Source: Macrostomum lignano (lineage: Eukaryota). From it: a stretch of DNA of 64,000 nucleotides. The stretch lies in assembly GCA_002269645.1 (NCBI GenBank), contig NIVC01003413.1, forward strand, positions 35,245 to 99,244, written 5' to 3'. Position numbers and translations under genes: made by a program. This document shows positions 1 to 54,473 of this stretch, in pieces. Under the pieces are notes generated by a model. It was not told where the DNA came from. It did not search any database and saw only the letters and a program-made list of their open reading frames with translations. The stretch's first letter is position 1. Every line of letters begins with the position of its first letter.

Positions 1-3000
1 AGCTCGCCCCTGACGCTGCCGATCCGACGTCCGTCGCTGCTGAAGACGTCGAGGTCGTCCGAGCTTTCGTTGCGGATCACCGACACGGCCAGCCCGTTGA
101 GGCCGGACTTCAGCGCGACGCCGACGAAGGCCGTAGCAGCTCCACCGGTGACTGGCGCGGTGCGCGCTTGCAGCCGCAGCGTCGGTGAGTTCGGCCACCG
201 CTCGCTGGTGAGCAGGTGGTACTCGCAGTGACCGTTGAATGTGTAGCTGCGGTTCGAGAGCGTGCTCAGGTGGGGGTCGCCTCGGTTGAAGCCTGGGGAT
301 CGGAGGTTGGTTGTTTGATTTGATGCTTAGTTGCTCAGGCTTTGGTTTGATGCTTAGTTGCTTAGGTTTTGGTTTGATGCTTAGTTGCTCAGGTTTTGGT
401 TTGATGCTTAGTTGCTCAGGTTTTGGTTTGATGCTTAGTTGCTCAGGTTTTGGTTTGATGCTTAGTTGGTTAGGTTTTGGTTTGATGCTTAGTTGCTCAG
501 GTTTTGTTTTGATGCTTAGTTGCTCAGGTTTTGTTTTGATGCTTAGTTGCTCAGGTTTTTTGTTTCGGTGCTTGTAAGATACCTAAAGCTGATTAGCTGC
601 CAAAAGCTGCCATGAGTGAATAAATAAATGAATGGCTCAAAATATATGTAGTCAAGCAAAGCAGTTACCTCCAGCAGGTTGCTGGTAATCCTGGCTGGTG
701 CACACGGGTCTGACGGTAGAATAAGCGGACATCATATTGGCCGCTGAGCAGATTTTTTGGCCATGCAACTCATTTTGATACTGCTTAGACCAGAGGCTAA
801 ATCGAACACTATCAGTCCTGCCTTGCCGAAAGAAGTACATTGCGTGTCCTGTACCGTCTGAGCTGGTGCTGATGAGGTGGCCAGCTGCAAATGATTGTTT
901 TTTTAATCAATTGAGAAATACGAAATATATAATTACCTCTTCATTGCTTAGGTTGTGACTCACTGGCTGAAATGTTGAACATGATCCGTCGCAAGGCAGC
1001 TCTCACTTTCCAAAGGGCATCACTTCTACGGCACAGCTGACTGATTTCGCTGCCAGCAGCTGCCAACGACATTTTGTAGCAGCACCTGGACGACACCAAT
1101 TGACTGCACTTGTGGAGCTGGCAGGCCCAAGTTTTGTAGGGTCTACAACTGTACCATGCACAACCCCTAAGTGTGGTCGAGTAGTACCAACAAAGTCTGT
1201 ATTTCCTTTCTGCACACTTGAAGCTGCTGTTGCGAAAGCACATCCGGATGCTGTCACTGGAGCACTCAAACTCGTACGGACTGTACCGCTTGTCAAGGAC
1301 TGCTGTGCGAAAATCGAAGGGACAGTCGGAGCAGCCTGGAAAGGCAGAGCTGCTCTGGTTGGCTCTGGCGGCTGCGATCCAATTGCTGCACTTTAACGAG
1401 TCGCTTGTCTGTTGATACCAGCTGCTAAGCTGCAGCACGTGACGCCCGGGTCTTCCCGAACTTCCGGGACTTAGGTTGGGCAGCTCGGGCCAGTCTGGGC
1501 GCAGGCTGAATGGCAGCTGATTTTTAAAGAAAGCAATATCCGTGAATCCCGAGAATGCCATCAGGTTCAACGTTGGATGGCTCCAGTTGAGAATTCTCGG
1601 CACAGGCAGGTGGAAGTCGCCGTAGTTGAAAATGGCGTATGAGTGAGTCTCGTTGCGCGTTACAACTGCTTGGAACTCGATGCTCTGAAATTGCATGCAG
1701 TAAGCAATTGCGCTTGATTGAGAAAGAGCTGAAAAGCTTGATTTTGCGGTCAGCTCTCAAAAGACGAAAAAAGTGTAAATCTGTTACTTTTTGCTTCGTT
1801 TAGACTGCTTTGCACGTTAGCTTTCCTTTTAATTGCCAAATACTGCCCATTATGAGCGTTTAAGTTTGGGCTTCTAAGCAAGCAGTGTAAATTCGTGATG
1901 TTTTTTCGTTCGGACTGCGTTGTGTTATAGCTTTATCAATTATCTTCGCACTCGCAAGCATGGGCAGATCTAGTTACGAAAGAAATGCAGGCTTGACACG
2001 CTTCGCTTCGACTTTGGCTTCGCTATGAAATAACTATTGAAGCTGAATCTTTGGGATCTTATCAGTGACAGAAAATTCTAAAGTAGATGTACAGCTGTGC
2101 AAGAATATTTTGCGTCCATTGATACAGGTTTAGTAGCTGAGCTGCAAGAATCCTAGCAGATGCGCTACAAACTCTTAAATGCCGTTTCAGCCTAAGCTAC
2201 TAACTACGATATTTTCTTGGTCATTGCCAAAAAACGGAAGTGCAAAATATTTCTCTGGGAATGAGCTCTGTCACTCCGGAGAGATTTCCCCACTTACAGC
2301 ATTTGCCTTGGCTCGAGAACACAGGCCCAGGCAGAGGTCGAGCCAGCCGTTTTTCTCGTCCCAAGCTTGCCTAGAAGTGCAGTTCGAGACGCAGTCGAAT
2401 CGGTTCCCATAAGGCAGTGACGGCGTCAGAATGCGCCAAGTCACGATGAGCGCCGTCAGAGGGTTGAACTTGGACCGAATCTCCTGCTCTATGATCTGCT
2501 TGACCGCGCGCCAGTTCGAGCTAGAGCTATGGTTCCTCGAATTCAGCAGCTCGAAGGAAACCTTCGGAGTCCAATATCTTCGGTAGTAGTTGGTGGCAGG
2601 CTTAACGAACCAGTAAGGCGCCACGATGGCTCCAGTAAAGTTGATCTTCGCCGAGGTGGAGTTGTATGGTAAATACGTCAGGCGATAACCAGAGAAATTG
2701 ATTGCTCCGTATTGGCTAACCTAGGGTGTTGAGAGTATTTTTTCACATTAGGTAGACATAAAGAGATAAAAACACATCAAAGAAGTTGATTAAAGCTGCG
2801 AATTCCCGCCAGCTCAGTAGAAAAAATGTCAACTCGAAGTTACAGTTAAACTCTGTATGCAAAGTAAGATGTTGCGAAGCAGGACTCACTCGACAAGACA
2901 AGCTTTCCTGACTGCCAATCAGAAATGGAATGCTTTGTGTTGCGTTAACAGTGTGATTTAGCCGGATACGGGTGTACCAGCTGATTCGGTAGTACCGGAT

Positions 3001-3455
3001 ACGGGTTGCATTTACTGTCGATAGGAGCATTTGAGCTGAAAAATGCATCCGGGATTGAGAAAACTCGAGTGACTTTAGCCAAATATAATTACAAATATAT
3101 CACGTCAACTCACGATAACAGACAGTCCCGTTGCCATAGTAACCCGGCTTGCAAATGCAATCAAATGAGCCAATCAGGTTGATGCAGTCGGCATGAGCAC
3201 TGCATTTGGAGCTACTGAGACACTCGTCAACGTCTTTAATTGGGTTCAGTTGATTGCCGATCAAATACAAGCACAAGTTTAGTTATAATAAGCCGAATTT
3301 ATTAAAAGTTAGTAAAGTCGAAAGTTTTCACTTACCGGTGCAATTATCAGTTCCGTTGCCTTGAAACCCATCGAAGCAGGTGCAGTTGTACGACCCCGGC
3401 GTGTCGGTGCAAGTTGCGTAGAGACCGCAGGGCTTCGAATCGCATTTTCTCACGT
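1..3455 (-). CDS. Module 5 exons (VWD exon truncated by window edge)
   Basis: Exons 3336-3455, 3114-3233, 2890-3035, 2298-2720, 964-1684, 669-884, 1-292. Confidence 0.85.
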
Positions 3456-12400: not shown

Positions 12401-15400
12401 TCGTTGAGGCCGGACTTCAGCGCGACGCCGACGAAGGCCGTGGCGGCTCCACCGCTGACTGGCGCGGTGCGCGCTTGCAGCCGCAGCGTCGGTGAGTTCG
12501 GCCACTGCTCGCTGGTGAGCAGGTGGTACTCGCAGTGACCGTTGAATGTGTAGCTGCGGTTCGAGAGCGTGCTCAGGTGAGGGTCGCCTCGGATGAAGCC
12601 TGGAGATCGGAGGTTGATTGTTTGGTTTAATTGCTTAGTTGCTCAGGTTTTGGTTTGATGCTTAGTTGCTCAGGTTTTGGTTTGATGCTTAGTTGCTCAG
12701 GATTTTGGTTTGATGCTTAGTTGCTCAGGTTTTGGTTTGATGCTTAGTTGCTCAGGTTTTGGTTTGATTCTGTAAGTGACCTAAAGCAGTTGAGCGGCCG
12801 GTAGCTGCCAAAAGTGAATAATTTTTCAAAATACTTAAAATATCGCAGTCAGAGCTACAATTAAAGCGAAGCAGTTACCTCTAGCTGGTTGCTGGTAGTT
12901 CTTGCTGGTGCACATGGGTCTGACGGCATAATAAGCGGCCATCATTCCGGCCGCTGAGCAGACTCTTAGGCCGTACAACTCATTTTGATACTGCGGAGAT
13001 CCGAAGCCAAATTGAAAACTATCAGTCCTGCTATGCCGATAGAAGTACATTGCGTGTCCTGCTTTGTCTGAGCTGGTGCTGATGAGTTGGCCAGCTGTAA
13101 ATGATTGTGTTTTGCAAATCAATGAATTAAAACTTATTTATATCTTATTATCTGGTTCAGTTTATTCAACTCCTCAATCCTCAAGTTCTGACTCACTGGA
13201 TGGCATGCTGAACATGATCCGTCGCATGACAGCTCTCACATTCCAGAGGGCATCACTTCTACGGCACAGCTGACTGATTTCGCTGCCAGCAACTGCCGAT
13301 GACATTCTGTAGCAGCATGTAATCCAAACCAGTCGGCTGCACATTTGGAGCCGGCAGGTCCAAGAAGAATGAGGCCGACAGCCACTGAACGCGCTGCAAT
13401 GGCACGTTTGTGAGCACTGGTAGTTGGTTTTGCGGAAGCACATCCTGATGCTGTCACCGGAGCACTCAAACTCGTACGGACTGTACCGCTTGTCAAGGAC
13501 TGCCGTGCGAAGATCGAAGGGACAGTCGGAGCAGCCTGGAAAGACAGAGCTGCTTTGGTTGGCTCTCGCGGCTGCGATCCAACTGCCGCACTCAGATAAA
13601 ACCCTCTTCCCGATGCTCAGCACGTGTCGTCCGGGTCTTCCCGAACTTCCAGGACTCAGGTTGGGCAGCTCGGGCCAGTCGGGGCGCAGGCTGAATGGCA
13701 GCTCTTTCCGAACGAATAAATTATCCATGAATCCTGAGAATGCCATCAGGTTCAACGTTGGATGGCTCCAGTTGAGGATTCTCGGCACAGGCAGGTGGAA
13801 GTCGCCGTAGTTGAAAATGGCGTATGAGTGAGTCTCGTTGCGCGTTACAACTGCTTGGAACTCGATGCTCTGAAATTGCATGCAGTAAGCAATTGTGCTC
13901 GATTGAGAAAGAGCTGAAAAGCTTGATTTGCGGTCAGCTCTCCAAAGACGAAAAAAGTTTAAATCTGTTACTTGTTGCTTCGTTTAGACTGCTTTGCACG
14001 ATAGCTTTCGTTTTAATTGCCAAAGACTGCCAATTCTGATCATTCAAGTTTGTGCCGTTAAGCAAGCAGTGTATATTCGTGATGTTTCTTTGTTCGCACT
14101 GCCTTGCGTGACAGTTTTATTAATTACCAAAACATGCTAATTCTTAGCACTCCCATGCATAAGCAGAGCTTTACGAAAGAAATGCAGGCGTGACACGCTT
14201 CGCTTTAAGTTTTCCATGAAATAACTATTGAAGCCCTACAAGAAGCTAAATTTCTGAAATCTTATTAGTGACAGGAAATTCTAAAGGTGTACAGCTGTGC
14301 AAGAATATTTTGCGTCCATTGATACCAGTTTAGTAGTTGCGCTGCAAGAATCCTAGCAGATGCGCTACAAACTCTTAATGCCGTTTCAGCCTAAGCTACT
14401 AACTACGATATTTGGGGGGCCGTAGCCGAGCGGTAGCGCAGCTGCTCTGGTGTACCAGCGACCCAGGCTCGATTCCAAGTGCAGTCACATTAATTTGGGG
14501 CTGAATTGGAATCTCGGCTTGGCTCTGCTCGTGCAATTAACGGCCTTGAGAGACAACCCCCAAGGCGCAGTGAAGTTTACATGCCTAACGATAGAATAAA
14601 GTTAGGGCCGCTGTACACTCCTGTGTGAGTGTGTGCCTGCGTACGTATCCGCGCGTTTTTATGCCTGCTCAAGGAAGTCGGCGGAATGGGCAGTAATGCC
14701 TCTCGCCGGTTGTGTGCCTATGTCGCTTAAAGTGCACCAGGGTGCACACAACCCCCTGCCTCTAATAAAAAAGAACTAAGATATTTTCTTGGTCATTGCC
14801 AGCAAACGGAAGTGCAAATTATTTCCGTGGGAATGAGCTCTGTCACTTCGGAGAGATTTCCCCACTCACAGCATTTGCCTTGTCTCGAGAACACAGGCCC
14901 AGGCAGAGGTCGAGCCAGCCGTTTTTCTCGTCCCAAGCTTGCCTAGAAGTGCAGTTCGAGACGCAGTCGAATCGGTTCCCATAAGGCAGTGACGGCGTCA
15001 GAATGCGCCAAGTCACGATGAGCGCCGTCAGAGGGTTGAACTTGGACCGAATCTCCTGCTCTATGATCTGCTTGACCGCGCGCCAGTTCGAGCTAGAGCT
15101 ATGGTTCCTCGAATTCAGCAGCTCGAAGGAAACCTTCGGAGTCCAATATCTCCGGTAGTAGTTGGTGGCAGGCTTAACGAACCAGTAAGGCGCCACGACG
15201 GCTCCAGTAAAGTTGATCTTCGCCGAGGTGGAGTTGTATGGTAAATGCCTCAGGCGATAACCAGAGAAACTGATTGCTCCGTATTGGCTAACCTAGGGTG
15301 TTAAGATTTTTTTATTTAAAGCACACAGAAAAAGTTAAAGGACAATTAAAAAGTTGATTTGAGCGAAATCTCCATCAGCTCAGTAGAAATAACTGTCAAT

Positions 15401-17402
15401 TCGAAGTTACAGTTCAACTTTGTACGCAAAGCCAGATGTTGCAGAGCAGGACTCACTCGAAAAGACAAACTTTCCTGACTGCCAATCAGAAAAGGAGCAC
15501 CACGTGGTGCGGAAATGGAGCGTCTGTCGCCGTACCAGATACGGGTGTACGAACTCATTCGGTAGTACCGGATACGGGTTGCATTTACTGTCGATAGGAT
15601 CATGTGAGCTGAAAAATGCATCCGGGATTGAGAAAACTCGAGTGACTTTAGCCAAATATAAATACAAATATATCACGTCAACTCACGATAACAGACAGTC
15701 CCGTTGCCATAGTAACCCGGCTTGCAAATGCAATCAAATGAACCGATCAGGTTGATGCAGTCGGCATGAGCATCGCATTTGGAGCTGCTGAGACACTCGT
15801 CAACGTCTTTAATTGGGTTCAGTTTATGGCCGTTCAAATACAAGCTCAAGTTTAGTTATAAGTAGCCGCATTTATTTAAAAGTTAGTAAAATAGAAGGTA
15901 GAGTAGCTCGCTTAATAAATAGGAATAAAATGAATGAGAGAACAAACATTAACTCGTTTTTTTACTTTAATTCAATTGCCAATGCATTTCGACCCTCGTA
16001 GGTCATCGTCAGGGCAGTAGTGAAATTGAAAATTCTAATAAACAGTTGAATAAATATACCTGTGATAAGTTGAATACACAATATAAATTATTGTACGTAG
16101 TTTTCAATCGAAACAAGTTAACACACGGTGCAGTAGCGTACACTCAAAGCTAAAACACGCTGAGTATGTCCCAGTATGTCTGCAACTTGAAGTCTCGTGT
16201 CCCTCGGCCTCTCAATGCAGGTGTCGTTTATAAATTTCATTGCTCTGGCGACCAGAGTATTTCGTACATCGGAAAAACTAAGCCACACTTGTACACTAGG
16301 GTCAAGGAGCACTGGACCAAAAGATCTGCTGTACAGGAGCATCTTCTCACATGCAACTCATGCTGTAACAACAAACCGATTGATTTATTTAAGATTATCG
16401 ATTCTTGCCGCCATGAGCACACTTTGAATATCTTAGAGGCTATGTACATCAAAGATCAGAACCCGAGCCTAAACTGCCAGCTAGCTATGGGGGGGTGCCA
16501 GCCGCCAACTCAGCGTGTTTTAGCTTGGAGTGTACGCTACTGCACCGTGTGTTAACTTGTTTCGATTGAAAACTACGTAATAATTTATATTGTGTATTCA
16601 ACTTATCACAGGTATATTTATTCAACTGTTTATTAGAATTTTCAATTTCACTACTGCCCTGACGATAACCTACAAGGGTCGAAATGCATTGGCAATTGAA
16701 TAAAAGTAAAAAAACGAGTTAATGTTTGTTCTCTAATTAAAGTCGAAGGTTTTCACTTACCGGTGCAATTATCTGTTCCGTTGCCTTGAAACCCATCGAT
16801 GCAGGTGCAGTTGTACGACCCCGGCGTGTCGGTGCAGGTAGCGTACAGACCGCAAGGCTTCGAATCGCATTTGCTCACGTCTGCAATGGTAGGTCGTTAC
16901 AGCAGATACGGATAACGAAATAAAGGAAAACGGGTGATCAATGGAATCAACAAAACATCACATCAACCTCACACTAGCACACACATCAGATCCACAACAA
17001 AACACATACACATCGGAAAAACAAGAATACACACATAAGACCCGCAAGCTCAAAACACAGATTAAAATGCAACCACCAGAAACAATAACACGAGAGGAAA
17101 GTTTACGGCAATAAATTTCAGATTGTGTGAATCTACTGCAATCCGGTAATCTACTGCGCAACTGCTCACCTTGCGGCTCCTGGCAGTCAGATATCAGACA
17201 GACATTCACTGACTGCTCGCATTGGGGTCCTGTAAATCCCAGATCGCACTTGCACTCTTCACGGTGATAGTAAGCTGCAATGGTGACGAGTGGGTGCGTG
17301 AGTGAGTGAGTGAGTGAGTGAGTGAGTGAGTGAGTGAGTAAGTGAGTGAGTGAGTGAGTCAGTCAGTCAGTCAGTCAGTCACCCACTCACTCCAGTCAGT
17401 CA

Positions 17403-18310: not shown

Positions 18311-21300
18311 AAGTCAGTCAGTCAGTCACCCACTCACTCAAATCAGTCAGTCAGTCAGTCAGTCAGTCAGTCAGTCAGTCAGTCAGTCAGTCAGTCACCC
18401 ACTCACTCAAATCAGTCAGTCAGTCAGTCAGTCAGTCAGTCAGTCAGTCAGTCAGTCACCCACTCACTCAAATCAGTCAGTCAGTCAGTCACCCACTCAC
18501 TCCAGTCAGTCAGTCAGTCAGTCAGTCAGTCAGTCAGTCAGTCAGTCAGTCAGTCAGTCAGTCAGTCAGTCAGTCACCCACTCACTCAAGTCAGTCAGTC
18601 AGTCAGTCAGTCAGTCAGTCAGTCAGCTACTCACCCGTGTCGTCAGCCATGCCGCAGTCAGGGCAGCAGCGGCCCCTGCTCCCGCAGTCGCACACCACAA
18701 TCCTGGGAGTCCACACCGTGACGGCTCCGACCTCGTCCACCGCCGCCAGCTGCAGTTTGATGTCGCCTCGCCAGTTGTCGACGGGCTGCCACACGAGCTG
18801 CCAGCTGCCGCTGGCTCCAGCCTCCAGCTTCGCGGTCCCCCCGACGGCCTCCAGCACGGTGACATTCGGTGAGGCACCGTCGGGATCCGTCACGGAGAAG
18901 GTGACACTGACACTGTTGTTGCCGCTCACTCGCAGCTGGCTCGGGGCGCTCACGAACTGCGGTGGTCGGTTGGCCAGGACGACACGGGTTCGAGTCTCGT
19001 CTCGAATGGCGACGGCCGCGTCTTGAGCGGCTGCGACCGAGCGAAGCTGAGCGGCGTCGAACATGCAGGTGAGGTCGGAGGAGCCGGAGCTGCGGCACAC
19101 CTGCCAGGGCGGAGCGGCAGCGGCATGGGTTTCCATGCGCAAAATGTTTTTCTCGAAATGCATAGTAGGTCTTTACTGGCAATTTTCTCACCAAGAATCC
19201 GGTAGTGACGTTAGCAACAACTTTTTAATTTTTTCGAGCTCGTACATTAAATAACTGATTACACCTGTTCTGATAAGCAGATGTGCAACCGACAGCTGCG
19301 CCGCAGCTATCGGGGGGAGCATCTGAAAGCTGCGTACGGCTGTTCAGTCAAAGTACTGCGGGCTCACCAAACTCACCCTATACTATCGCAGCTAATGCTG
19401 ATTGTCATTTTAGAGCAGGTTTAACTGAAGAAATGTAGAGTTAAGTGTCTTGTTCGAGGACACTAATGGTTCCAGTGAGATCGGGAATCCAACGGTCAAC
19501 CTTCATGTCGAGAGCTACAACCCCTTATAGATTAATGAGTGGATCCAGGGTGGCCAACCATTTTTTGATCAGGGGTACATCAGAAATTTATACCACAACG
19601 AGCGAGGTATCAGCGCAATTTTACCACCACAGGTCAACATTTTCATTTCGCTTGAAAATAGGATCATGACCGTATCTCAGGAAATTTTTCTCTTAAGTGT
19701 CCGATGACCCAATAAATTCACACCAGGACTCATGCATCGTAAAAATTTCTGCTTTTTCCCGAATACTGTAGTTCCACATTAGCACTTCTTAACTTCAACC
19801 TGCCTGTCCGCTCACCTCTTCCGAAGCGTTCTTGAGCTCCGCGTTCCCGCCGAACAGCGCCAGCATGTTGTCCTTGAAGTCCTCAGCAAAGGTCGGCACG
19901 AAGCTGAGATTGCAGAAATCAGCTCGGCCCTTGCCAGCCGGGTAGTGCAGATAGCTCGGCTCTGAGCTCTTGATTCTCCAGCTGTTCCCGAACTCAAACA
20001 GCTGCTTCTCGGAGCTGCCAGCTTTTAGGGCGCCACCGTATCCCAGTCTGAATCGGTATGCGTACCTGTTGCCTAGCAACCCGTCCAGTCCGCTCGCGCA
20101 TTTTCCTGTCAAGTCCAGTTGAACGCCGACTCTGAGCGAGCTCGTCTCCATGGTAACGGTAACGCTGACGCCGGCAGATTCGTCGACAATGTCGATAGTG
20201 CTGTTGTCAGGGACCTCCAGCCGGTAGCTGTCCAGTCTGGTCGCGTTGCTCAGCGCCGCCAGCTCGCCCCTGACGCTGCCGATCCGACGTCCGTCGCTGC
20301 TGAAGACGTCGAGGTCGTCGGAGCTTTCGTTGCGGATCACCGACACGGCCAGCTCGTTGAGGCCGGACTTCAGCGCGACGCCGACGAAGGCCGTGGCGCC
20401 TCCACCGCTGACTGGCGCGGTGCGCGCTTGCAGCTGCACCCTCGGTAAGCGCCAGCAAAATATGTTGTAGAGCAGGTGGTACTCGCAATGACCGTTGAAT
20501 GTGTAGCTGCGGTTCGAGAGCGTGCTCAGGTGAGGGTCGCCTCGGATGAAGCCTGGATATCGGACGTTGGTGTTTGGTTTGATGCTTATAAGTGACCTAA
20601 AGTATTTGAGCTTTAATTACTTTATGAAATACTCAAAATATGGGTGCTTAGAGCTACAGTTACAGCAAATCAGTTACCTCCAACAGGTGGCTGGTAGTTC
20701 TTGCTGGTGCACACGGGTCTTACGGCAGAATAAGCGGCCATCATTCCGGCCGCTGAGCAGACTCTTAGGCCGTACAACTCATTTTGATACTGCTGAGACC
20801 GGAGGCCAAATCGAACTCGATCAGTCGTCATTTGCCGATAAAAGTAAATTGCGTGTCCGGCGCCGTCTGAGCTGCTGCTGATGAGGTGACCAGCTACAAA
20901 TGATTGTTTTTTTTAATTCAGTGGACTAACACTTGGTAAATATTTTACCGTATTTTACATTTTACATTTATATTTAAATACATTTTACCATGTTATTCAA
21001 ACTTTCACGGTCAAGTTGTGACTCACTGGATGACATGTTGAACATGATCTGTCGCATGGCAGCTCTCACTTTCCAGACGGCATCACTTCTACGGCACAGC
21101 TGACTGATTTCGCTGCCAGCAGCTGCCAACGACATTCTGTAGCAGCAACTGGTCGACACCAGCTGACTGCACTTTTGAAGCCGGCAGGCCAAGGAATAAG
21201 AAGGTCTACATCTGCTGTACCTGAACCTTTGTGCGCACAGGTAGCTGGTGTTGCGAAAGCACATCCTGATGCTGTCACCGGAGCACTCAAACTCGTATGG

Positions 21301-24300
21301 ACTGTACCGCTTGTCAAGGACTGCCGTGCGAAGATCGAAGGGACAGTCGGAGCAGCCTGGAAAGACAGAGCGGCTCTGGTTGGCTCTGGCGGCTGCGATC
21401 CAACTGCCGCACTCAGATAAAACCCTCTTCCCAAAGCTCAGCACGTGACGTCCGGGTCTTCCCGAACTTCCGGGACTCAGGTTGGGCAGCTCGGGCCAGT
21501 CGGGGCGCAGGCTGAATGGCAGCTCTTTCCGAACGAAAACATTATCCGTGAATCCTGAGAATGCCATCAGGTTCAACGTTGGATGGCTCCAGTTGAGGAT
21601 TCTCGGCACAGGCAGGTGAAAGTCGCCGTAGTTGAAAATGGCGTATGAGTGAGTCTCGTTGCGCGTTACAACTGCTTGGAACTCGATGCTCTGAAATTGC
21701 ATGCAGTAAGCAATTGTGCTCGATTGAGAAAGAGCTGAAAAGCTTGATTTGCGGTCAGCTCTTCAAAGACGAAAAAAGTGTAAATTCGTGATGTTTTTTC
21801 GTTCGGACTGCGTTTTATCAATTACCAAAGCATGGCAATTCTTAGCACTCCCATGCATGGGCAGATCTTAATGAAAGAAATAAAATGCAGGCGTGACACG
21901 CTTTGCTTCGAATTTGGCTTCGCTATGAAATATTCGTAACTATTGAAGCTAAATCTTTGGGATCTTATTAGTGACGCAAAATTCTAAAGTAGATGTACAG
22001 CTGTGCAACAAGAATATTTTGCGTCCATTGATACAGGTTTAACATTTGAGCTGCAAGAATCCTAGCAGATGCGCTACAAACTCTTAATGCTGTTTCAGCC
22101 TTAGCTACTAACTACGATATTTTCTGGGTCATCGCCAGAAACCCCCCTGCCTCTAATAAAAAAGAACTAAGATATTTTCTGGGTCATTGCCAGCAAACAG
22201 AAGTGCAAAATATTTCTCTGGGAATGAGCTGTGTCACCTCGGAGAGATTTCCCCACTTACAGCATTTGCCTTGGCTCGAGAACACAGGCCCAGGCAGAGG
22301 TCGAGCCAGCCGTTTTTCTCGTCCCAAGCTTGCCTAGAAGTGCAGTTCGAGACGCAGTCGAATCGGTTCCCATAAGGCAGTGACGGCGTCAGAATGCGCC
22401 AAGTCACGATGAGCGCCGTCAGAGGGTTGAACTTGGACCGAATCTCCTGCTGGATAATCTGCTTGACCGCGCGCCAGTTCGACCTGGTGCTGTGGTTCCT
22501 CGAATTCAGCAGCTCGTAGGAAACCTTCGGAATCCAATATCTTCTGTAGTAGTTGGTGACAGGCTTAACGAACCAGTAAGGCGCCACGACGGCTCCAGTA
22601 AAGTTGATCTTCGCCGAGGTGGAGTTGTATGGTAAATACCCCAGGCGATAACCAGAGAAACTGATGGCGCCGTAGTTTGTGAGCTAGGGTGTTGATGATT
22701 CTTTATTATTAAGTACACACAAAAAGTACAAGCACAATTATCGTTATCATGTTTCAAGACATCCTAAAGTAAAGATATAAAGATCTATACTTTAAGATAT
22801 AAAGATATTAAGTAAAGATATTTAAAGAATTTTTTTTTAAATGTAGTTGATTTGAGCCGATTTCCTCTCATCTCAGAAGAAAAAGTCGTCAATTTGAAGT
22901 TACCGTTTAACTCTGTATGCAAAGTAGGATGTTGCAAAGCAGGACTTACTCGACAAGACAAACTTTCCTGGCTGGCAATCAGAAACGGAGCGCCACGTGG
23001 AGCGGAAATGGTGCTACTGTACCATCCACTCGCACTGGTTGCATTTACTGTCGATAGGAGCATTTGAGCTGAAAAATGCATCCGGGATTGAGAAAACTCG
23101 AGTGACTTTAGCCAACTATAAATACAAATATATCACGTCAACTCACGATAACAGACAGTCCCGTTGCCATAGTAACCCGGCTTGCAGATACAATCAAATG
23201 AGCCGATCAGGTTTATGCAGTCGGCATGAGCATCGCATTTGGAGCTGCTGAGACACTCGTCAACGTCTGTAATTGGGTTCAGTTGATGGCCAAACAAATG
23301 CAAGCACAAGTTTAGTTATAAGTAGCCGCATTTAGTTAAAGTTATTAAAGTCGAAGGTTTTCACTTACCGGTGCATTTATCAGTTCCGTTGCCTTGAAAC
23401 CCATCGATGCAGGTGCAGTTGTACGACCCCGGCGTGTCGGTGCAGGTAGCGTACAGACCACAAGGCTTCGAATCGCATTTGCTCACGTCTGCAATGGTAG
23501 GTCGTTGCAGCAGATACGGATAACGAAATAAAGGAAAACGGGTGATCGATGGAATCAACAAAACATCACATCAATCTCACACTAGCACACACATTAGATA
23601 TACAACAACACACACATCGGAAAAACAAGAATACACACATAAGACCAGTAGGAACACACATCTGATCCACAAAAACACACAAAAGGCCTACCAGAATACA
23701 AACATTATAGAGCCAGTTGAAAACACAGAAACAAATTAAAAAGCAACCATTAGACACAATAACACGAGGGAAAGTTTAAGACAATAAATTTCAGATTGTG
23801 TGAATCTACTGCAATCCGGTAATCTACTACGCAACTGCTCACCTTGCGGCTCCTGACAGTCAGTTGTCAGAAAGACTTTCACTGACTGCTCCTTCACTCA
23901 CTGACTGAAATCTTCTATCTTCTGTCTTTTACATTCTTATACCCCGACTGCTGACTAAATCAAACTCACTTTTCTGGGACTGAGCTGTCTAATGGTTAGT
24001 GACTTTCGTTAGTGAGCCACGAGTGACTTTGATCATTATCTACCAATGAAACCGTACACATAATATTATTGTCACATGATTTCGTAGTAAAAGTGTGTTG
24101 AATAATCTGTCATTGTGTCATGCTGTACGCTCATTATTCAACGCTTAGGAATCATTATTTAAGGCTTCTAAAAATACATTCATGAGACAATGGGTTTGTG
24201 TATATGGTTTTGTCATAGACAATGATAAATTTTAGTCACTCCTTTTTTCGCCACTCGTAAAAATTTTATTATTGTCTACCTCCAAAACTATATAGACAAT

Positions 24301-29171: not shown

Positions 29172-32100
29172 AGTCAGTCAGTCAGTCAGTCAGTCACCCA
29201 CTCACTCAAGTCAGTCAGTCAGTCAGTCAGTCAGTCAGTCAGTCACCCACTCACTCAAGTCAGTCAGTCAGTCAGTCAGTCAGTCACTCAAGTCAGTCAG
29301 TCAGTCAGTCAGTCAGTCACCCACTCACTCAAGTCAGTCAGTCAGTCAGTCAGTCAGTCAGTCAGTCAGTCAATCAGTCAGTCAGTCAGTCAGTCAGTCA
29401 GTCAGTCAGCTACTCACCCGTGTCGTCAGCCATGCCGCAGTCAGGGCAGCAGCGGCTCCTGCTCCCGCAGTCGCACACCACAATCCTGGGAGTCCACACC
29501 GTGACGGCTCCGACCTCGTCCACCGCCGCCAGCTGCAGTTTGATGTCGTCTCGCCAGTTGTCGACGGGCTGCCACACGAGCTGCCAGCTGCCGCTGGCTC
29601 CAGCCTCCAGCTTCGCGGTCCCCCCGACGGCCTCCAGCACGGTGACATTCGGTGAGGCGCCGTCGGGATCCGTGACGGAGAAGGTGACACTGACGCTGTT
29701 GTTGCCGCTCACTCGTAGCTGGCTCGGGGCGCTCACGAACTGCGGTGGTCGGTTGGCCAGGACGACCCGGGTTCGAGTCTCGTCTTGAATGGCGACGGCC
29801 GCGTCTTGAGCGGCTGCGACCGAGCGAAGCTGAGCGGCGTCGAACATGCAGGTGAGGTCGGAGGAGCCGGAGCTGCGGCACACCTGCCAGGGCGGAGCGA
29901 CGAGGGAGTCCATGCACCATGTGTACAGTCTTTAATATATGCAACAACTTGTCTATTTTCACATTAAGTAGTGGATCCAGTACATCAGACAGCATGTTAA
30001 GACGGGCGGTTTTTTAGCGCTATTTTACCGCCACAGGTCAGAATTTTCATTTCGCTTGATCATGATCATGACCGTATGTCAGGAAATTTTACTCTCAAGG
30101 GTCAAATTACCCAATAAATTCACACCAGGACTCATGCAGCATAAACATTTCTGCCTTCTCCCGAATACTGTAGTTCCACATTAGCACATCTTAAATTCAA
30201 CCTGTCCACTCACCTCTTCCGAAGCGTTCTTGAGCTCCGCGTTTCCGCCGAACAGCGCCAGCATGTTGTCCTTGAAGTCCTCAGCAAAGGTCGGTACGAA
30301 GCTGAGATTGCAGAAGTCAGCTCGGCCCTTGCCAGCCGGGTAGTGCAGGTAGCTCGAATCTGAGCTCTCGAGTCTCCAGCTGTTCCCGAACTCAAACAGC
30401 TGCCTCTCGGAGCTGCCAGCTGGCAGGACGCTGCCGTTTCTCAGTCTGAATCCGCTCGCGTCGCTGTTGCCTAGCAACCCGCAAAGGCCTCGCGAGCATT
30501 TTTCTGCGTTTGAAAGTAGAACGCCGATTCTGAGCGAGCTCGTCTCCATGGTAACGGTGACGCTGACGCCGGCAGACTCGTCGACAATGTCGATGGTGCT
30601 GTTGTCGGGGACCTCCAGTCGGTAGCTGTCCAGTCTGGTCGCGTTGTTCAGCGCCGCCAGCTCGCCCCTGACGCTGCCGATCCGACGCCCGTCGCTGCTG
30701 AAGACGTCGAGGTCGTCGGAGCTTTCGTTGCGGATCACCGACACGGCCAGCTCGTTGAGGCCGGACTTCAGCGCGACGCCGACGAAGGCCGTGGCGGCTC
30801 CACCGCTGACTGGCGCGGTGCGCGCTTGCAGCCGTACCGTCGGTGAGTTCGGCCAGCACCTGCACCAGTTGTAGATCAGGTGGTACTCGCAATGACCGTT
30901 GAATGTGTAGCTGCTGTTCGAGAGCGTGCTCAGGTGAGGGTCGCCGCGGATGAAGCCTGGATATCGGAGGTTGGTGTTTGGTTTGATGCTTATAAGTGAC
31001 CTAAAGCAGTTGAGCGTCAGGAAGCTGCCAAGAGTGAGCAAATAAACAAACTACTTAAAATATTGGTACTCAGAGCTACAGTTACAGCAAATCAGTTACC
31101 TCCAACAGGTGGCTGGTAGTTCTTGCTGGTGCACACGGGTCTTACGGCAGAATAAGCGGCCATCATTCCGGCCGCTGAGCAGACTCTTAGGCCGTACAAC
31201 TCATTTTGATACTGCTGAGACCGGAGGCCAAATCGAACTCGGTTAGTCGTTCTTTTCCGATAGAAGTACATTGCGTGTCCGGCGCCGTCTGAGCTGCTGT
31301 TGATGAGGTGACCAGCTACAAATGATTGTTTTTTTTAATTCAGTGGACTAACACTTATATATATTTTACCATCAGCTTCGAGTTATTCAAACTTTTACGG
31401 TCAATTTGTGACTCACTGAATGACATGTTGAACATGATCCGTCGCAAGGCAGCTCTCACTTTCCAAAGGGCATCACTTCTACGGCACAGCTGACTGATTT
31501 CGCTGCCAGCAGCTGCTGATGACATTCTGTAGCAGCAACTGGTCGACACCAGCTGACTGCACTTTTGAAGCTGGCAGGCCAAGGAATAAGAAGGTCTACA
31601 TCTGCTGTACATGTAACTGAACTCTTTTGCGCAATGGTAGCTGGTGTTGCGGAAGCACATCCGGATGCTGTCACTGGAGCACTCAAACTCGTACGGACTG
31701 TACCGCTTGTCAAGGACTGCCGTGCGAAGATCGAAGGGACAGTCGGAGCAGCCTGGAAAGACAGAGCGGCTCTGGTTGGCTCTGGCGGCTGCGATCCAAC
31801 TGCCGCACTCAGATAAAACCCTTTTCCCGATGCTCAGCACGTGACGTCCGGGTCTTCCCGAACTTCCGGGACTCAGGTTGGGCAGCTCGGGCCAGTCGGG
31901 GCGCAGGCTGAATGGCAGCTCTTTCCGAACGAAAACATTATCCGTGAATCCTGAGAATGCCATCAGGTTCAACGTTGGATGGCTCCAGTTGAGGATTCTC
32001 GGCACAGGCAGGTGGAAGTCGCCGTAGTTGAAAATGGCGTATGAGTGAGTCTCGTTGCGCGTTACAACTGCTTGGAACTCGATGCTCTGAAATTGCATGC

Positions 32101-38100: not shown

Positions 38101-41100
38101 CACTCAAGTCAGTCAGTCAGTCAGTCAGTCAGTCAGTCACTCAGTCAGTCAGTCAGTCAGTCAGTCAGTCAGTCAGTCAGTCAGTCAGTCAGTCAGTCAG
38201 TCAGTCAGTCAGTCAGTCAGTCTGTCACCCACTCACTCAAGTCAGTCAGTCAGCTACTCACCCGTTTCGTCAGCCATGCCGCAGTCAGGACAGCAGCGGC
38301 CCCTGCTCCCGCAGTCGCACACCACAATCCTGGGAGTACACACCGTGACGGCTCCGACCTCGTCCACCGCCGCCAGCTGCAGTTTGATGTCGCCACGCCA
38401 GTTGTCAACGGGCTGCCACACGAGCTGCCAGCTGCCGCTGGCTCCAGCCTCCAGCTTCGCGGTCCCCCCGACGGCCTCAAGCACGGTGACATTCGGTGAG
38501 GCGCCGTCGGGATCCGTGACGGAGAAGGTGACACTGACGCTGTTGTTGCCGCTCACTCGTAGCTGGGTCGGGGCGCTCACGAACTGCGGTGGTCGGTTGG
38601 CCAGGACGACCCGGGTTCGAGTCTCGTCTTGAATGGCGACGGCCGCGTCTTGAGCGGCTGCGACCGAGCGAAGCTGAGCGGCGTCGAACATGCAGGTGAG
38701 GTCGGAGGAGCCGGAGCTGCGGCACACCTGCCAGGGCGGAGCGACGAGGGAGTCCATGCACCATGTGTACAGTCTTTAATATATGCAACAACTTGTCTAT
38801 TTTCACATTAAGTAGTGGATCCAGTACATCAGACAGCATGTTAAGACGGGCGGTTTTTTAGCGCTATTTTACCGCCACAGGTCAGAATTTTCATTTCGCT
38901 TGATCATGATCATGACCGTATGTCAGGAAATTTTACTCTCAAGGGTCAAATTACCCAATAAATTCACACCAGGACTCATGCAGCATAAACATTTCTGCCT
39001 TCTCCCGAATACTGTAGTTCCACATTAGCACATCTTAAATTCAACCTGTCCACTCACCTCTTCCGAAGCGTTCTTGAGCTCCGCGTTTCCGCCGAACAGC
39101 GCCAGCATGTTGTCCTTGAAGTCCTCAGCAAAGGTCGGTACGAAGCTGAGATTGCAGAAGTCAGCTCGGCCCTTGCCAGCCGGGTAGTGCAGGTAGCTCG
39201 GCTCTGAGCTGTTGAGTCTCCAGCTGTTCCCGAACTCAAACAGCTGCCTCTCGGAGCTGCCAGCTGGCAGGACGCTGCCGTTTCTCAGTCTGAATCCGCT
39301 CGCGTCGCTGTTGCCTAGCAACCCGCAAAGGCCTCGCGAGCATTTTTCTGCGTTTGAAAGTAGAACGCCGATTCTGAGCGAGCTCGTCTCCATGGTAACG
39401 GTGACGCTGACGCCGGCAGACTCGTCGACAATGTCGATGGTGCTGTTGTCGGGGACCTCCAGCCGGTAGCTGTCCAGTCTGGTCGCGTTGTTCAGCGCCG
39501 CCAGCTCGCCCCTGACGCTGCCGATCCGACGCCCGTCGCTGCTGAAGACGTCGAGGTCGTCGGAGCTTTCGTTGCGGATCACCGACACGGCCAGCTCGTT
39601 GAGGCCGGACTTCAGCGCGACGCCGACGAAGGCCGTGGCGGCTCCACCGCTGACTGGCGCGGTGCGCGCTTGCAGCCGTACCGTCGGTGAGTTCGGCCAG
39701 CACCTGCACCAGTTGTAGATCAGGTGGTACTCGCAATGACCGTTGAATGTGTAGCTGCTGTTCGAGAGCGTGCTCAGGTGAGGGTCGCCGCGGATGAAGC
39801 CTGGATATCGGAGGTTGGTGTTTGGTTTGATGCTTATAAGTGACCTAAAGCAGTTGAGCGTCAGGAAGCTGCCAAGAGTGAGCAAATAAACAAACTACTT
39901 AAAATATTGGTACTCAGAGCTACAGTTACAGCAAATCAGTTACCTCCAACAGGTGGCTGGTAGTTCTTGCTGGTGCACACGGGTCTTACGGCAGAATAAG
40001 CGGCCATCATTCCGGCCGCTGAGCAGACTCTTAGGCCGTACAACTCATTTTGATACTGCTGAGACCGGAGGCCAAATCGAACTCGGTTAGTCGTTCTTTT
40101 CCGATAGAAGTACATTGCGTGTCCGGCGCCGTCTGAGCTGCTGTTGATGAGGTGACCAGCTACAAATGATTGTTTTTTTTAATTCAGTGGACTAACACTT
40201 ATATATATTTTACCATCAGCTTCGAGTTATTCAAACTTTTACGGTCAATTTGTGACTCACTGAATGACATGTTGAACATGATCCGTCGCAAGGCAGCTCT
40301 CACTTTCCAGACGGCATCACTTCTACGGCACAGCTGACTGATTTCGCTGCCAGCAGCTGCTGATGACATTCTGTAGCAGCAACTGGTCGACACCAGCTGA
40401 CTGCACTTTTGAAGCTGGCAGGCCAAGGAATAAGAAGGTCTACATCTGCTGTACATGTAACTGAACTCTTTTGCGCAATGGTAGCTGGTGTTGCGGAAGC
40501 ACATCCTGATGCTGTCACCGGAGCACTCAAACTCGTACGGACTGTACCGCTTGTCAAGGACTGCCGTGCGAAGATCGAAGGGACAGTCGGAGCAGCCTGG
40601 AAAGACAGAGCTGCTCTGGTTGGCTCTGGCGGCTGCGATCCAACTGCGGCACTCAGATAAAACCCTCTTCCCGATGCTCAGCACGTGACGTCCGGGTCTT
40701 CCCGAACTTCCGGGACTCAGGTTGGGCAGCTCGGGCCATTCGGGGCGCAGGCTGAATGGCAGCTCTTTTCGAACGAAAACATTATCCATGAATCCTGAGA
40801 ATGCTATCAGGTTCAACGTTGGATGGCTCCAGTTGAGGATTCTCGGCACAGGCAGGTGGAAGTCGCCGTAGTTGAAAATGGCGTATGAGTGAGTCTCGTT
40901 GCGCGTTACAACTGCTTGGAACTCGATGCTCTGAAATTGCATGCAGTAAGCAATTGTGCTCGATTGAGAAAAAGCTGAAAAGCTTGATTTGTGGTCAGCT
41001 CTCCAAAGACGAAAAAAGTGTAAATTCGTTACTTGTTGCTTCGTTTTGACTGCTTTGCACGATAGTTTTTATTTTAATTGCCAAATACTGCTAATTCTGA

Positions 41101-51331: not shown

Positions 51332-51354
51332 TTTTTTCACCCACAAAAAAATAT

Positions 51355-52641: not shown

Positions 52642-52671
52642 TTTTTAACTAAAAATAAAATAAAATAAGAA

Positions 52672-53892: not shown

Positions 53893-53908
53893 ATTTCTAT
53901 TTAAAAGG

Positions 53909-54277
53909 ATGCCAATTATTTTCGAAAAAGACATTGACAAATACTACGACAAAGAGGAACTTAATCTCATTAAACGCGGATCTGGACTTTTCCCTGCAGG
54001 CCACTATCCAAGAAAAGAACGTTCTGGGAACGGTCTTGCCGATTTGATCGCTCAAGGGGCCAAGATTTTTAAGGTCATTGGAGAGAACAAAGAGAACATC
54101 AAGAACGTTGCCAAAGCGGCTGGCAGTGTAGCCACAGCAGCCAAAAAGATAAAGGATACTGTAACACCTAAACAAGATATTCAACCCCTTGCACCGAGTG
54201 CAGATAGTGTCGATCCAGCCATCTACGCAAAGATGAGAGCTGAATATAAGAAAGGAGGCGGTTTTAAATTTGACTAA
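53909..54277 (+). CDS. Small putative virion core / membrane-lytic precursor
   Basis: ATG at 53909; G-x-G motifs (KRGSG, RSGNG, KKGGG) and amphipathic helix GLADLIAQGAKIFKVI. Confidence 0.55.
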   Translation: MPIIFEKDIDKYYDKEELNLIKRGSGLFPAGHYPRKERSGNGLADLIAQGAKIFKVIGENKENIKNVAKAAGSVATAAKKIKDTVTPKQDIQPLAPSADSVDPAIYAKMRAEYKKGGGFKFD

Positions 54278-54473
54278 TTTGGTGCACCCTGACGGTAAAA
54301 GAGGTGTGAGGGTGTAGGACTAGTCGGATGTAGGACTAGTCGAAAAAAGACACACACAACCCGAAAAAAGACACACACATCCCGCAAAGAGACACACACA
54401 TACACATCCCGAAAAAAGACACACGCGTCTTAAATACACAAGTTTAAAAAGAAAAAGTTTTTTTACATAAAAA

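What the first reader, a model, noticed from the sequence alone, without database searches (positions are those of the whole stretch)
1060..1230. Hypervariable Cys/aromatic loop inside the AMOP domain
Between invariant IRMCF and CCY the modules read: M5 RNSSFKCAERKYRLCWYYSTTLRGCAWYSCRPYKTWACQLHKCSQLVSSR; M4 RKTNYQCSQTCHCSAFSGCRPHSSWTCRLQMCSRLVWIT; M3 RNTSYLCAQRFRYSRCRPSYSLACRLQKCSQLVSTS; M1/M2 RNTSYHCAKEFSYMYSRCRPSYSLACQLQKCSQLVSTS. Flanking scaffold is almost identical, length changes are multiples of 3 (exon sizes 670, 670, 664, 673, 721), and added Cys come in pairs. Inference: a CDR-like, disulfide-stapled recognition loop under diversifying selection.
Basis: partly seen in the sequence, partly recalled or inferred. 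Interest (0 to 1): 0.78.

Follow-up and report, generated by a model that had tools for sequence, protein, structure and literature searches.

The report
Variable cysteine loop in flatworm mucin-like modules
Five tandem modules of a mucin-4-like flatworm gene each carry a different cysteine-rich insert at one spot, but the differences look like old sequence cassettes that escaped copy-correction between repeats, not an antibody-like loop under selection to diversify.

Summary
On the minus strand of what is almost certainly Macrostomum lignano DNA, five tandem modules (EGF-EGF-NIDO-AMOP-like-VWD-Ig-like-EGF) each have one exon of 670, 670, 664, 673 or 721 nt. Between invariant IRMCF and CCY sits a loop of 38, 38, 36, 39 or 50 residues with 4, 4, 4, 6 or 6 cysteines.

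- In the loop, synonymous and nonsynonymous divergence are both raised (pS 0.43, pN 0.25; scaffold 0.10 and 0.055). pN/pS is about 0.6 in both.
- Loop divergence (0.29-0.43) is about that of the adjacent intron (0.26-0.31).
- In paralogues at two other loci of the same genome the loop is the most conserved segment (94-96% nt identity, against 56-74% in the flanks).
- So the loop is not intrinsically hypervariable.

My best reading is discrete, old loop cassettes inside a family that evolves as a gene-conversion mosaic, with relaxed constraint on the non-cysteine residues.

The AMOP assignment rests on position and cysteine motifs only; Pfam and hhalign do not support it. The structure prediction was too poor to judge exposure. 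Interest is modest.

The parts
1085..1234 (-). M5 loop, 50 aa, 6 Cys (RNSSFKCAERKYRLCWYYSTTLRGCAWYSCRPYKTWACQLHKCSQLVSSR); this is the finding's interval
13318..13434 (-). M4 loop, 39 aa, 6 Cys
21148..21255 (-). M3 loop, 36 aa, 4 Cys
31538..31651 (-). M2 loop, 38 aa, 4 Cys (identical to M1)
40382..40495 (-). M1 loop, 38 aa, 4 Cys
964..1684 (-). M5 exon A (721 nt): C-terminal part of NIDO plus N-terminal half of the AMOP-like domain, including the loop
   Evidence: Pfam NIDO
13197..13869 (-). M4 exon A (673 nt)
21027..21690 (-). M3 exon A (664 nt)
31417..32086 (-). M2 exon A (670 nt); the A|B|V junctions match the independent gene model P0015
40261..40930 (-). M1 exon A (670 nt)
669..884 (-). 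M5 exon B (216 nt), C-terminal half of the AMOP-like domain; homologous exons at 12879-13094, 20678-20893, 31100-31315 and 39944-40159
2890..3035 (-). M5 exon N0 (start of NIDO), a second length-variable patch (119/119/128/146/152 nt, all 2 mod 3); copies at 15457-15608, 22950-23068, 33273-33391 and 47213-47340
39058..39800 (-). M1 VWD exon, with two further variable patches; copies at 30214-30956, 19816-20552, 11863-12599 and 1-292 (cut by the window edge)
48004..48099 (-). The only signal-peptide-like exon in the window (MGLNFASVAGDFGWQLLCLFLLVGAGSC), upstream of M1; 78% identical to the N-terminus of paralogue P0010
37658..37792 (-). Last EGF exon of M1. It ends ...CAA G|gtgagc (phase 1) and joins in frame to the first EGF exon of M2 (ag|AC GTG AGC at about 37408). 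The same holds at the M2/M3, M3/M4 and M4/M5 boundaries

Best explanation
The window holds one long Macrostomum lignano gene, read on the minus strand. It encodes a secreted or membrane-attached MUC4/'mucin-like protein'-type glycoprotein with at least five serial modules (EGF-EGF-NIDO-AMOP-like-VWD-Ig-like-EGF).

In this flatworm family the short Cys-free turn that canonical AMOP domains have between C[FY] and CCY has been replaced by a 36-50-residue insert. The insert has a fixed C-terminal cysteine framework (C-x7-C-x4-C-x7-CC) and a length-variable N-terminal part of 8-22 residues, with 0 or 2 extra Cys. It is presumably a disulfide-stapled surface excrescence.

The insert exists as a few discrete cassette types: M1/M2/M3 type, M4 type, M5 type, and the 'SFTGSSASGCKPENSWRCELENCRHLVSTR' type at other loci. 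The striking picture in this window, identical scaffold and different loops, arises because the family evolves as a gene-conversion mosaic. In this array the exon scaffold has been homogenised, while the loop segments keep a much older divergence. Conversion tracts probably stop at the already diverged core. Elsewhere the loop cassette itself has been copied between otherwise diverged paralogues.

Non-cysteine loop residues are weakly constrained (omega about 0.6-1). Codon-level evidence for positive selection is absent.

Shown: the anatomy, the divergence pattern, the mosaicism and the lack of omega>1. Inferred: disulfide stapling, surface exposure, a binding role, a single five-module transcript, and gene conversion as the process (inferred from discordant segment histories).
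For: 1. Loop synonymous divergence is raised about as much as nonsynonymous.
- Loop pS is 0.34-0.72 and pN 0.26-0.35 for the deep pairs. Scaffold pS is 0.05-0.16 and pN 0.02-0.09. Pooled pN/pS is 0.59 in the loop and 0.56 in the scaffold.
- The ungapped, Cys-anchored C-arm alone has pS 0.41-0.78 and pN 0.20-0.30, so this is not an alignment artefact.

2. At other loci of the same genome (L001 = P0001 gene, L002 = P0010 gene, GCA_002269645.1) the loop is the most conserved part.
- Loop pS is 0.063 and pN 0.062, against scaffold pS 0.31 and pN 0.14.
- L1a and L2a are 141/147 nt identical in the loop, against 308/429 upstream and 32/57 downstream (Fisher p 7e-13).

3. There is mosaicism elsewhere. 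M5's patch QLSSWYQQTSDSLKCSN is 87-90% identical to L1a but 53-63% identical to M1-M4. M2 equals M3 in some intervals. The P0014 loop looks like an M3-type N-part joined to an L-type C-part.

4. Intron divergence between modules is heterogeneous (0.10-0.31). The intron next to the loop exon is at 0.26-0.31, close to the loop's 0.29-0.43.

5. The modules look functional. All reading frames are intact, splice sites are kept, indels are in frame and Cys counts are even.

6. The insert is old. A 4-Cys, 38-aa loop is present in the 31%-identical homologue P0002, encoded as an uninterrupted ORF on a Logan contig. A 2-Cys, 21-aa loop is present in P0004. Sponge and mollusc homologues have about 12 Cys-free residues.

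7. The one-gene model fits. There is a single signal-peptide exon, no terminal exon in the window, and phase-1 junctions that join modules in frame.
Against: - Only four distinct loop sequences are in the window, and about 22 synonymous sites per loop, so the omega estimates have wide errors.
- The N-arm of the loop (RNTSYHCAKE) shows 13 nonsynonymous to 1 synonymous inferred changes. This is in the direction of positive selection but not significant (P=0.20).
- M1/M2 vs M3 shows 6.5 nonsynonymous to 0.5 synonymous differences.
- Within the recently homogenised L-type loops pN/pS is about 1, against 0.45 in their scaffold. That could be relaxed constraint or weak positive selection.
- Retention of three or four distinct cassettes in one otherwise homogenised array is also what selection against homogenisation would produce. 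The data cannot separate that from a passive barrier to conversion.
- Gene conversion is inferred, not observed.
- No transcript evidence for the five-module mRNA was available.
Confidence: 0.6

Rival explanations
1. The loop is a CDR-like recognition surface, and each module is kept different by diversifying selection, which also purges conversion events that would homogenise it.
For: - The divergence is sharply bounded, with in-frame indels, a preserved Cys framework and paired extra Cys.
- The loop N-arm has 13 nonsynonymous to 1 synonymous changes.
- pN/pS is about 1 in recently homogenised L-type loops, against 0.45 in their scaffold.
- Loop pN (0.26-0.35) is 2-3 times the divergence of the long N1-A intron (0.10-0.13).
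Against: - Overall loop pN/pS is 0.19-0.74, no higher than the scaffold, and pS is raised 4-8 fold, which selection on protein cannot produce.
- The sister multi-module gene (L002/P0010) carries the same loop type in all three modules, and the loop is shared with the P0001 gene.
- M1 and M2 have identical loops.
- Several other patches behave similarly.
- Exposure is untested.
Confidence: 0.2
2. The loop DNA is a local mutational hot spot, for example error-prone repair or targeted hypermutation, which raises synonymous and nonsynonymous change alike.
For: Both pS and pN are raised in the loop, with sharp boundaries.
Against: - The homologous loop is the least diverged segment among L1a, L2a, L2b and L2c.
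- M1 and M2 loops are identical.
- There are no internal repeats, microsatellite or slippage-prone structure in the loop DNA.
- No associated diversifying machinery was seen in the window.
Confidence: 0.05
3. The modules, or their loops, are decaying. The loop is an unconstrained linker or disordered spacer drifting neutrally in redundant modules.
For: - Loop divergence is about that of the adjacent intron.
- Family-wide omega is rather high, about 0.56.
- AlphaFold2 gives no confident structure.
Against: - The Cys framework C-x7-C-x4-C-x7-CC, the R/K-P after the second Cys and S-x-L-V are invariant.
- Cys counts stay even, all indels are in frame, and there are no stops in five exons of any of the five modules (the VWD exon of M5 is cut by the window edge).
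- C-arm pN is below pS.
- A 4-Cys loop is retained in a 31%-identical homologue.
Confidence: 0.1
4. This is an assembly artefact. Mis-joined or chimeric repeat copies in a highly repetitive, partly polyploid genome create the apparent array.
For: M. lignano assemblies are repeat-rich. M1 and M2 are 98% identical over 3.1 kb.
Against: - The five units differ in introns, in transposon insertions (41.5-45.6 kb, 8.3-11.8 kb, 24-28.8 kb) and in microsatellites.
- An independent gene model (P0015) matches M2.
- Similar multi-module loci exist in GCA_002269645.1.
Confidence: 0.03

Closest known systems
MUC4 / SUSD2 / invertebrate 'mucin-like protein' (NIDO-AMOP-VWD extracellular module)
   Same: - The order is the same: NIDO, then a Cys-rich region of about 200 aa, then VWD, followed by an Ig/cadherin-like region and EGF domains, with a signal peptide and a hydrophobic C-terminus in the paralogues P0001 and P0010.
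- P0001 aligns collinearly with the sponge Dysidea avara mucin-like protein over 917 columns (E 3e-33), with C-x2-W, C-P, RRY, CCY and RP...Y.P in register.
   Different: - There are at least five such modules in series in one gene, instead of one.
- Pfam AMOP is not detected.
- The Cys framework is remodelled: C-x2-C-P instead of CPC, a single C instead of the second CC, and extra Cys.
- There are two lineage-specific inserts: the 36-50-aa Cys loop and a stretch of about 30 aa after CCY.
- No C8-3_MUC4 hit and no mucin PTS repeats were seen.
Drosophila/Anopheles Mesh (NIDO, AMOP, VWD; gut septate-junction and peritrophic-matrix protein)
   Same: It belongs to the same NIDO-AMOP-VWD class of invertebrate extracellular proteins. 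The class is named in papers listed; the rest is my own knowledge of the family.
   Different: Mesh has a single module with a sushi/CCP domain. No hypervariable AMOP insert has been reported for it. I did not compare the sequences here.
Concerted evolution with islands of divergence in tandem multigene families (process analogue)
   Same: Neighbouring segments have discordant histories. The scaffold is homogenised, the diverged core is retained and cassettes are shared between loci.
   Different: Here the units are modules inside one gene as well as separate paralogues. Conversion is inferred from sequence patterns only.
Germline-diversified invertebrate immune-type families with mosaic element patterns (e.g. 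sea-urchin Sp185/333, snail FREPs)
   Same: These are multi-copy families built from shared and variable blocks reshuffled among copies. This resemblance is recalled from my own knowledge and was not tested.
   Different: There is no evidence here of an immune role, of somatic diversification, of omega>1 or of high allelic polymorphism. Only 4-5 cassette types were seen.

Membership tests
AMOP domain (Pfam PF03782) | Significant match to the AMOP profile | tested here: not met
   There was no PF03782 hit at E<=10 for exon-A ORFs, for spliced M1, or for a loop-deleted spliced AMOP-like region, and none in P0001 or P0002. The model is in the library, since it hits the fish mucin-like protein P0018 segment at E 1.4e-8. 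It also misses the sponge and mollusc segments that look canonical, so the model is narrow.
AMOP domain (Pfam PF03782) | Profile-profile similarity to bona fide AMOP regions | tested here: inconclusive
   hhalign of the flatworm alignment A4 against A5 (fish, frog, sponge and mollusc AMOP regions) gave probability 6.5% and E 0.0056 over 48 columns covering only the N-terminal C-x2-W...CP...RY part.
AMOP domain (Pfam PF03782) | Conserved cysteine motif set (C-x2-W, CPC, C[FY], CCY, CC, C..Y..RP) | tested here: inconclusive
   C-x2-W, C-P, C[FY], CCY and RP align and are invariant or nearly so. CPC is C-x2-C-P, the second CC is a single C, and the C before Y..RP is missing.
AMOP domain (Pfam PF03782) | Position between NIDO and VWD, as in MUC4 and SUSD2 | tested here: met
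   In spliced M1, Pfam places NIDO at 42-270 and VWD at 481-653, with the region in between. The BLASTP alignment to the sponge mucin-like protein is collinear.
MUC4-like / mucin-like protein architecture | NIDO, VWD and EGF domains present | tested here: met
   NIDO E 9e-9 and VWD E 1e-7. EGF_CA and EGF_3 are found in P0001, and EGF exons are found in every module.
MUC4-like / mucin-like protein architecture | C8-3_MUC4 domain after VWD | tested here: not met
   PF23263 is found in the sponge, anemone and frog homologues but not in P0001 or P0002. The window exon after VWD gives only sub-threshold Big_9 and Cadherin_5 hits.
Loop under diversifying (positive) selection, CDR-like | dN/dS > 1 in the loop | tested here: not met
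   NG86 pN/pS is 0.19-0.74 for the deep pairs and 0.59 pooled, equal to the scaffold at 0.56. Only the 10-codon N-arm (13 nonsynonymous to 1 synonymous, P=0.20) and M1-M3 (6.5 to 0.5) lean above 1, and neither is significant.
Loop under diversifying (positive) selection, CDR-like | Divergence above the local neutral level | tested here: inconclusive
   Loop divergence is 0.29-0.43. The adjacent A-B intron is at 0.26-0.31, the B-V intron at 0.14-0.29 and the long N1-A intron at 0.10-0.13. The neutral yardstick is itself heterogeneous.
Loop under diversifying (positive) selection, CDR-like | Variability is a general property of the loop across family members and alleles | tested here: not met
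   The loop is the most conserved segment among L1a, L2a, L2b and L2c. It is identical in P0001 and its near-identical copy P0006, which differ at 8 residues elsewhere. True allelic data were not available.
Loop under diversifying (positive) selection, CDR-like | Solvent-exposed, structured loop | tested here: inconclusive
   AlphaFold2 on P0015 with a 12-sequence alignment gave mean pLDDT 43.8, pTM 0.29 and loop residues below 50. There is no solved AMOP structure by sequence.
Gene-conversion mosaic (concerted evolution) | Adjacent segments with significantly discordant similarity relationships, including at synonymous sites | tested here: met
   L1a-L2a are 96% identical in the loop and 56-72% in the flanks (p 7e-13). 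The window modules show the reverse pattern (p down to 3e-20). The M5 linker patch is closest to L1a.

The most novel reading that the evidence does not exclude
The five (or more) modules form a multi-specific recognition or adhesion array. Selection keeps distinct disulfide-knotted loop cassettes in each AMOP-like domain, and exchange of whole cassettes between paralogues by gene conversion serves as a germline diversification mechanism for this flatworm surface-protein family. That would be a non-Ig, non-LRR variable-loop scaffold.
Probability: 0.13. Interest if true: 0.65.

Novelty: new variant of a known kind. Interest (0 to 1): 0.33.

Why it matters
If the best explanation holds, this is a clean, small example of how gene conversion in a tandem-module gene can mimic a 'hypervariable loop'. 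It warns against inferring diversifying selection from protein alignments of paralogous repeats without checking synonymous sites and other loci.

It also documents an uncharacterised flatworm family. In this family the NIDO-AMOP-VWD unit, which is single-copy in MUC4, SUSD2 and Mesh, is serially repeated, and the AMOP-like domain has acquired a large cysteine-stapled insert with a handful of cassette types.

AMOP has no solved structure and no defined ligand. A natural series of insert variants at one position could help map a functional surface if the protein's role in Macrostomum (epidermis, gut or adhesion) were established.

Tried and rejected
- The search for homologous proteins with the M1 exon-A ORF found nothing. 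With an AMOP-region alignment it found a single weak hit. The word index seems to miss this family, which was found only by the exhaustive representative search and then by querying with P0001.
- Pfam AMOP was negative throughout. hhalign was weak.
- The PDB sequence search found only MUC5AC VWD, and no AMOP structure.
- AlphaFold2 on P0015 with 12 sequences was low confidence. I therefore ran no fold search and did not spend the second prediction, because no deeper permitted alignment was available.
- The metagenome scan for relatives found none.
- The look-up of P0015 for more flanking or allelic DNA returned 'not on record'.
- I looked for internal repeats or slippage as the source of the loop indels and found none.
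- Literature searches found nothing on this family in Macrostomum or on variable AMOP inserts.
- I considered and rejected five separate tandem genes. Only one signal-peptide exon and no terminal exon are present, and the modules join in frame. This remains unconfirmed by RNA.
Full report
**What is in the window**

The window is animal genomic DNA. The nearest database proteins are all from the flatworm Macrostomum lignano: UniRef A0A1I8F4L1, A0A1I8GB96 and others, and loci from assembly GCA_002269645.1.

On the minus strand there are five tandem units:
- M1 at about 37.9-47.9 kb
- M2 at about 28.9-37.6 kb
- M3 at about 17-23.7 kb
- M4 at about 5.6-17 kb
- M5 at about 1-3.6 kb, cut by the window edge

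Each unit has the same exon series: two EGF exons; exon N0 and exon N1 (NIDO); exon A (end of NIDO plus the first half of a Cys-rich region); exon B (216 nt, the second half of that region); a VWD exon; an Ig/cadherin-like exon; and a last EGF exon. The exon junctions I derived are reproduced by an independent gene model, P0015, which equals spliced M2 except for three residues at one acceptor.

Only one signal-peptide-like exon exists (48099-48004), upstream of M1. No C-terminal exon of the kind seen in paralogues P0001 and P0010 is present. The last EGF exon of each unit ends in phase 1 and joins in frame to the first EGF exon of the next unit. There is no RNA evidence.

**Check of the observation**

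Exon A is 670, 670, 664, 673 and 721 nt in M1-M5, with canonical splice sites.

The loop coordinates are M5 1085-1234, M4 13318-13434, M3 21148-21255, M2 31538-31651 and M1 40382-40495. Loop Cys counts are 6, 6, 4, 4 and 4, and the whole region has 14 or 16 Cys.

Loop nucleotide divergence is 0.29-0.43 for M1/M3 vs M4 vs M5, against 0.03-0.10 in the rest of the exon (Fisher p 3e-8 to 3e-20).

Minor corrections:
- Fifteen of M5's 51 extra nucleotides lie in a different patch upstream.
- M1 and M2 loops are identical, and M3 is close to them.
- Aromatic residues are not enriched in loops overall, whereas Cys and Ser/Thr are.

**Is it AMOP?**

Pfam finds NIDO (E 9e-9) and VWD (E 1e-7) on the spliced module. 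It finds no AMOP even at E<=10, also after deleting the loop.

The AMOP model is in the library. It hits the corresponding segment of a fish 'mucin-like protein' (P0018, E 1.4e-8). It also misses the sponge and mollusc segments that look canonical, so the model is narrow.

hhalign between the flatworm region and those AMOP regions is weak (probability 6.5%, E 0.0056, N-terminal 48 columns).

On the other hand, P0001 aligns collinearly with the sponge mucin-like protein from NIDO to the EGFs (E 3e-33), with C-x2-W, C-P, RRY, CCY and RP..Y.P in register. These positions are invariant or nearly so in a joint alignment.

I therefore call the region AMOP-like by position and motif, not a demonstrated member. 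Canonical homologues have about 12 Cys-free residues between C[FY] and CCY. The M. lignano family has 36-50 residues with 4-6 Cys. The distant homologue P0002 has 38 residues with 4 Cys, and P0004 has 21 residues with 2 Cys. The loop is thus an old, lineage-specific insert with a conserved framework C-x7-C-x4-C-x7-CC and a length-variable N-terminal part.

**Selection test in the window**

Nei-Gojobori counts on a codon alignment give the following.

| Region | pS | pN | Source |
|---|---|---|---|
| Loop, deep pairs | 0.34-0.72 | 0.26-0.35 | |
| Scaffold, deep pairs | 0.05-0.16 | 0.02-0.09 | |
| Loop C-arm (23 ungapped, Cys-anchored codons) | 0.41-0.78 | 0.20-0.30 | |

- For the deep pairs in the loop, dN/dS is 0.19-0.74.
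- Pooled pN/pS is 0.59 in the loop and 0.56 in the scaffold.
- Because the C-arm alone shows the same rise in synonymous change, the rise is not an alignment artefact.
- Only the 10-codon N-arm (13 nonsynonymous to 1 synonymous inferred changes, P=0.20) and the M1-M3 comparison (6.5 to 0.5) lean the other way, and neither is significant.
- Introns between the same modules differ by 0.10-0.31. The intron next to exon A is at 0.26-0.31, about the loop's own divergence.

**Evidence from other loci**

The exhaustive profile search found P0001, a single-module gene with a signal peptide and a hydrophobic C-terminus. The follow-up search found P0010-P0015. I fetched the DNA of two loci, which gave four more exon-A copies: L1a, L2a, L2b and L2c.

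Among these the loop 'SFTGSSASGCKPENSWRC[EK]LENCR[HQY]LVSTR' is the most conserved part. Loop pS is 0.063 and pN 0.062, against scaffold pS 0.31 and pN 0.14. L1a and L2a are 141/147 nt identical in the loop region, against 308/429 upstream and 32/57 downstream (p 7e-13).

So a loop cassette has been copied between otherwise diverged genes, and the three modules of the sister multi-module gene all carry the same loop type.

Other signs of mosaicism:
- M5's upstream patch is 87-90% identical to L1a but only 53-63% identical to M1-M4.
- M2 and M3 are identical over some intervals.
- M1 and M2 are 98% identical over 3.1 kb, with identical loops.
- The P0014 loop looks like a recombinant of the M3-type and L-type cassettes (protein level only).
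- A module-wide scan shows other variable patches: the N0 exon with in-frame length changes, the NIDO-AMOP linker, exon B, and two VWD patches, one with pN 0.32 against pS 0.07.

**Interpretation**

The loop is a real, conserved-framework, Cys-rich insert, and it is the largest divergent coding patch in this array. Its 'hypervariability' is specific to this array and is carried equally by synonymous sites.

The simplest account is a family evolving as a gene-conversion mosaic. In this array the scaffold was homogenised, while older, discrete loop cassettes were retained. Elsewhere the cassette itself was spread. A diverged core is expected to stop conversion tracts, which gives sharp boundaries without any selection.

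An intrinsic mutational hot spot is contradicted by the conserved L-type loops and by the lack of repeats in the loop DNA. Decay is contradicted by intact frames, even Cys counts and the invariant framework.

Selection that preserves different cassettes per module cannot be excluded, but nothing measured here requires it. Whether the insert is exposed could not be tested. That inserts of this size sit on the surface, and that the Cys are disulfide-bonded, are inferences.

**Comparison with known systems, and novelty**

The gene belongs to the NIDO-AMOP-VWD class (MUC4, SUSD2, Mesh, invertebrate 'mucin-like proteins'). It differs in three ways: serial repetition of the whole unit, a remodelled AMOP-like Cys framework, and the large variable insert.

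I found no literature on this family in Macrostomum or on variable AMOP inserts.

I rate it a new variant of a known kind with modest interest. Its main value is as a documented case where paralogue mosaicism imitates a hypervariable loop, and as a possible handle on the unknown function of AMOP.

Noticed in passing
window 50468-64000 (both strands): There are Polinton/Maverick-like virus-type transposon genes: a double-jelly-roll capsid-like ORF (51355-52641, minus), A32-like packaging ATPase fragments (54474-54968; possibly 62461-62853), an rve integrase with a chromodomain (58377-59447), an adenovirus-type C5 protease (61958-62470) and a PC4-like ORF (57280-58056). There may be two partial copies. 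I annotated ORF by ORF only and assembled nothing.
   Followed up: partly
window 2890-3035, 15457-15608, 22950-23068, 33273-33391, 47213-47340 (minus): Exon N0 (start of NIDO) is a second in-frame length-variable patch (146/152/119/119/128 nt). It has R/Y/W/S-rich variable peptides, e.g. RIRYYRISWYTRIRLNHTVNATQS against SASGWYSSTISAPRG; pN is 0.22-0.42 and pS 0.29-0.36.
   Followed up: partly
VWD exons, M1 about 39690-39730 and homologous sites (alignment columns 528-540): A short VWD patch (HLIYNWCRCWPN / HLLYNIFCWRLPR / HLLTSEQWPN) shows pN 0.32 with pS 0.07. This is the only patch where nonsynonymous change clearly exceeds synonymous change, and M1/M2 gain two Cys there.
   Followed up: no
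window 314-559: There is a 27-nt tandem repeat of 9.1 copies (95% matches) in the intron between exon B and the VWD exon of M5. It is absent or much shorter in the other modules.
   Followed up: partly
window 5898-7714; similar tracts near 17.4-18.6 kb, 29.1-29.4 kb and 37.9-38.3 kb: There are very long (AGTC)n microsatellites (448 units in M4) in the intron between the Ig-like exon and the last EGF exon of each module. They read as SQSV/LTHS pseudo-ORFs in the ORF list.
   Followed up: partly
window 41.5-45.6 kb, 8.3-11.8 kb, 3.5-5 kb, 16.1-16.6 kb, 24.4-28.6 kb: There are transposon fragments inside introns and between modules: RNase H (45036-45479) in a 5.7-kb insertion in M1's N1-A intron, a retroviral-type aspartyl protease (4325-4960), a GIY-YIG nuclease ORF (16166-16555, Penelope-like?), and unassigned ORFs at 24420-25557 and 27621-28585.
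   Followed up: partly
window 23814-23891 (minus): There is a remnant copy of the 3' part of a 'last EGF' exon (...VKVFLTTDCQEPQ|gt) just upstream of M3's first EGF exon. It is separate from M2's own last EGF exon at 28962-29066. This suggests a past unit boundary rearrangement around the 24-28.8 kb insertion.
   Followed up: no
L002 (GCA_002269645.1 NIVC01000862.1) 22205-22840: Exon-A copy L2a in the sister locus has an in-frame stop after ...WYVKAVLR and a 4-codon deletion (AAAR). It is possibly a decaying module inside the 52-kb P0010 gene model, which itself skips most of the locus.
   Followed up: no
P0002 / L003 (Logan SRR30276804 contig, 4733 nt): This distant homologue is encoded as one uninterrupted 1134-aa ORF, with a single module and a C-terminal transmembrane segment. 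It is strikingly rich in W/Y runs (e.g. CPWFWWSWYCSYY in the loop; YYYW and WWW elsewhere). The source organism was not identified.
   Followed up: partly
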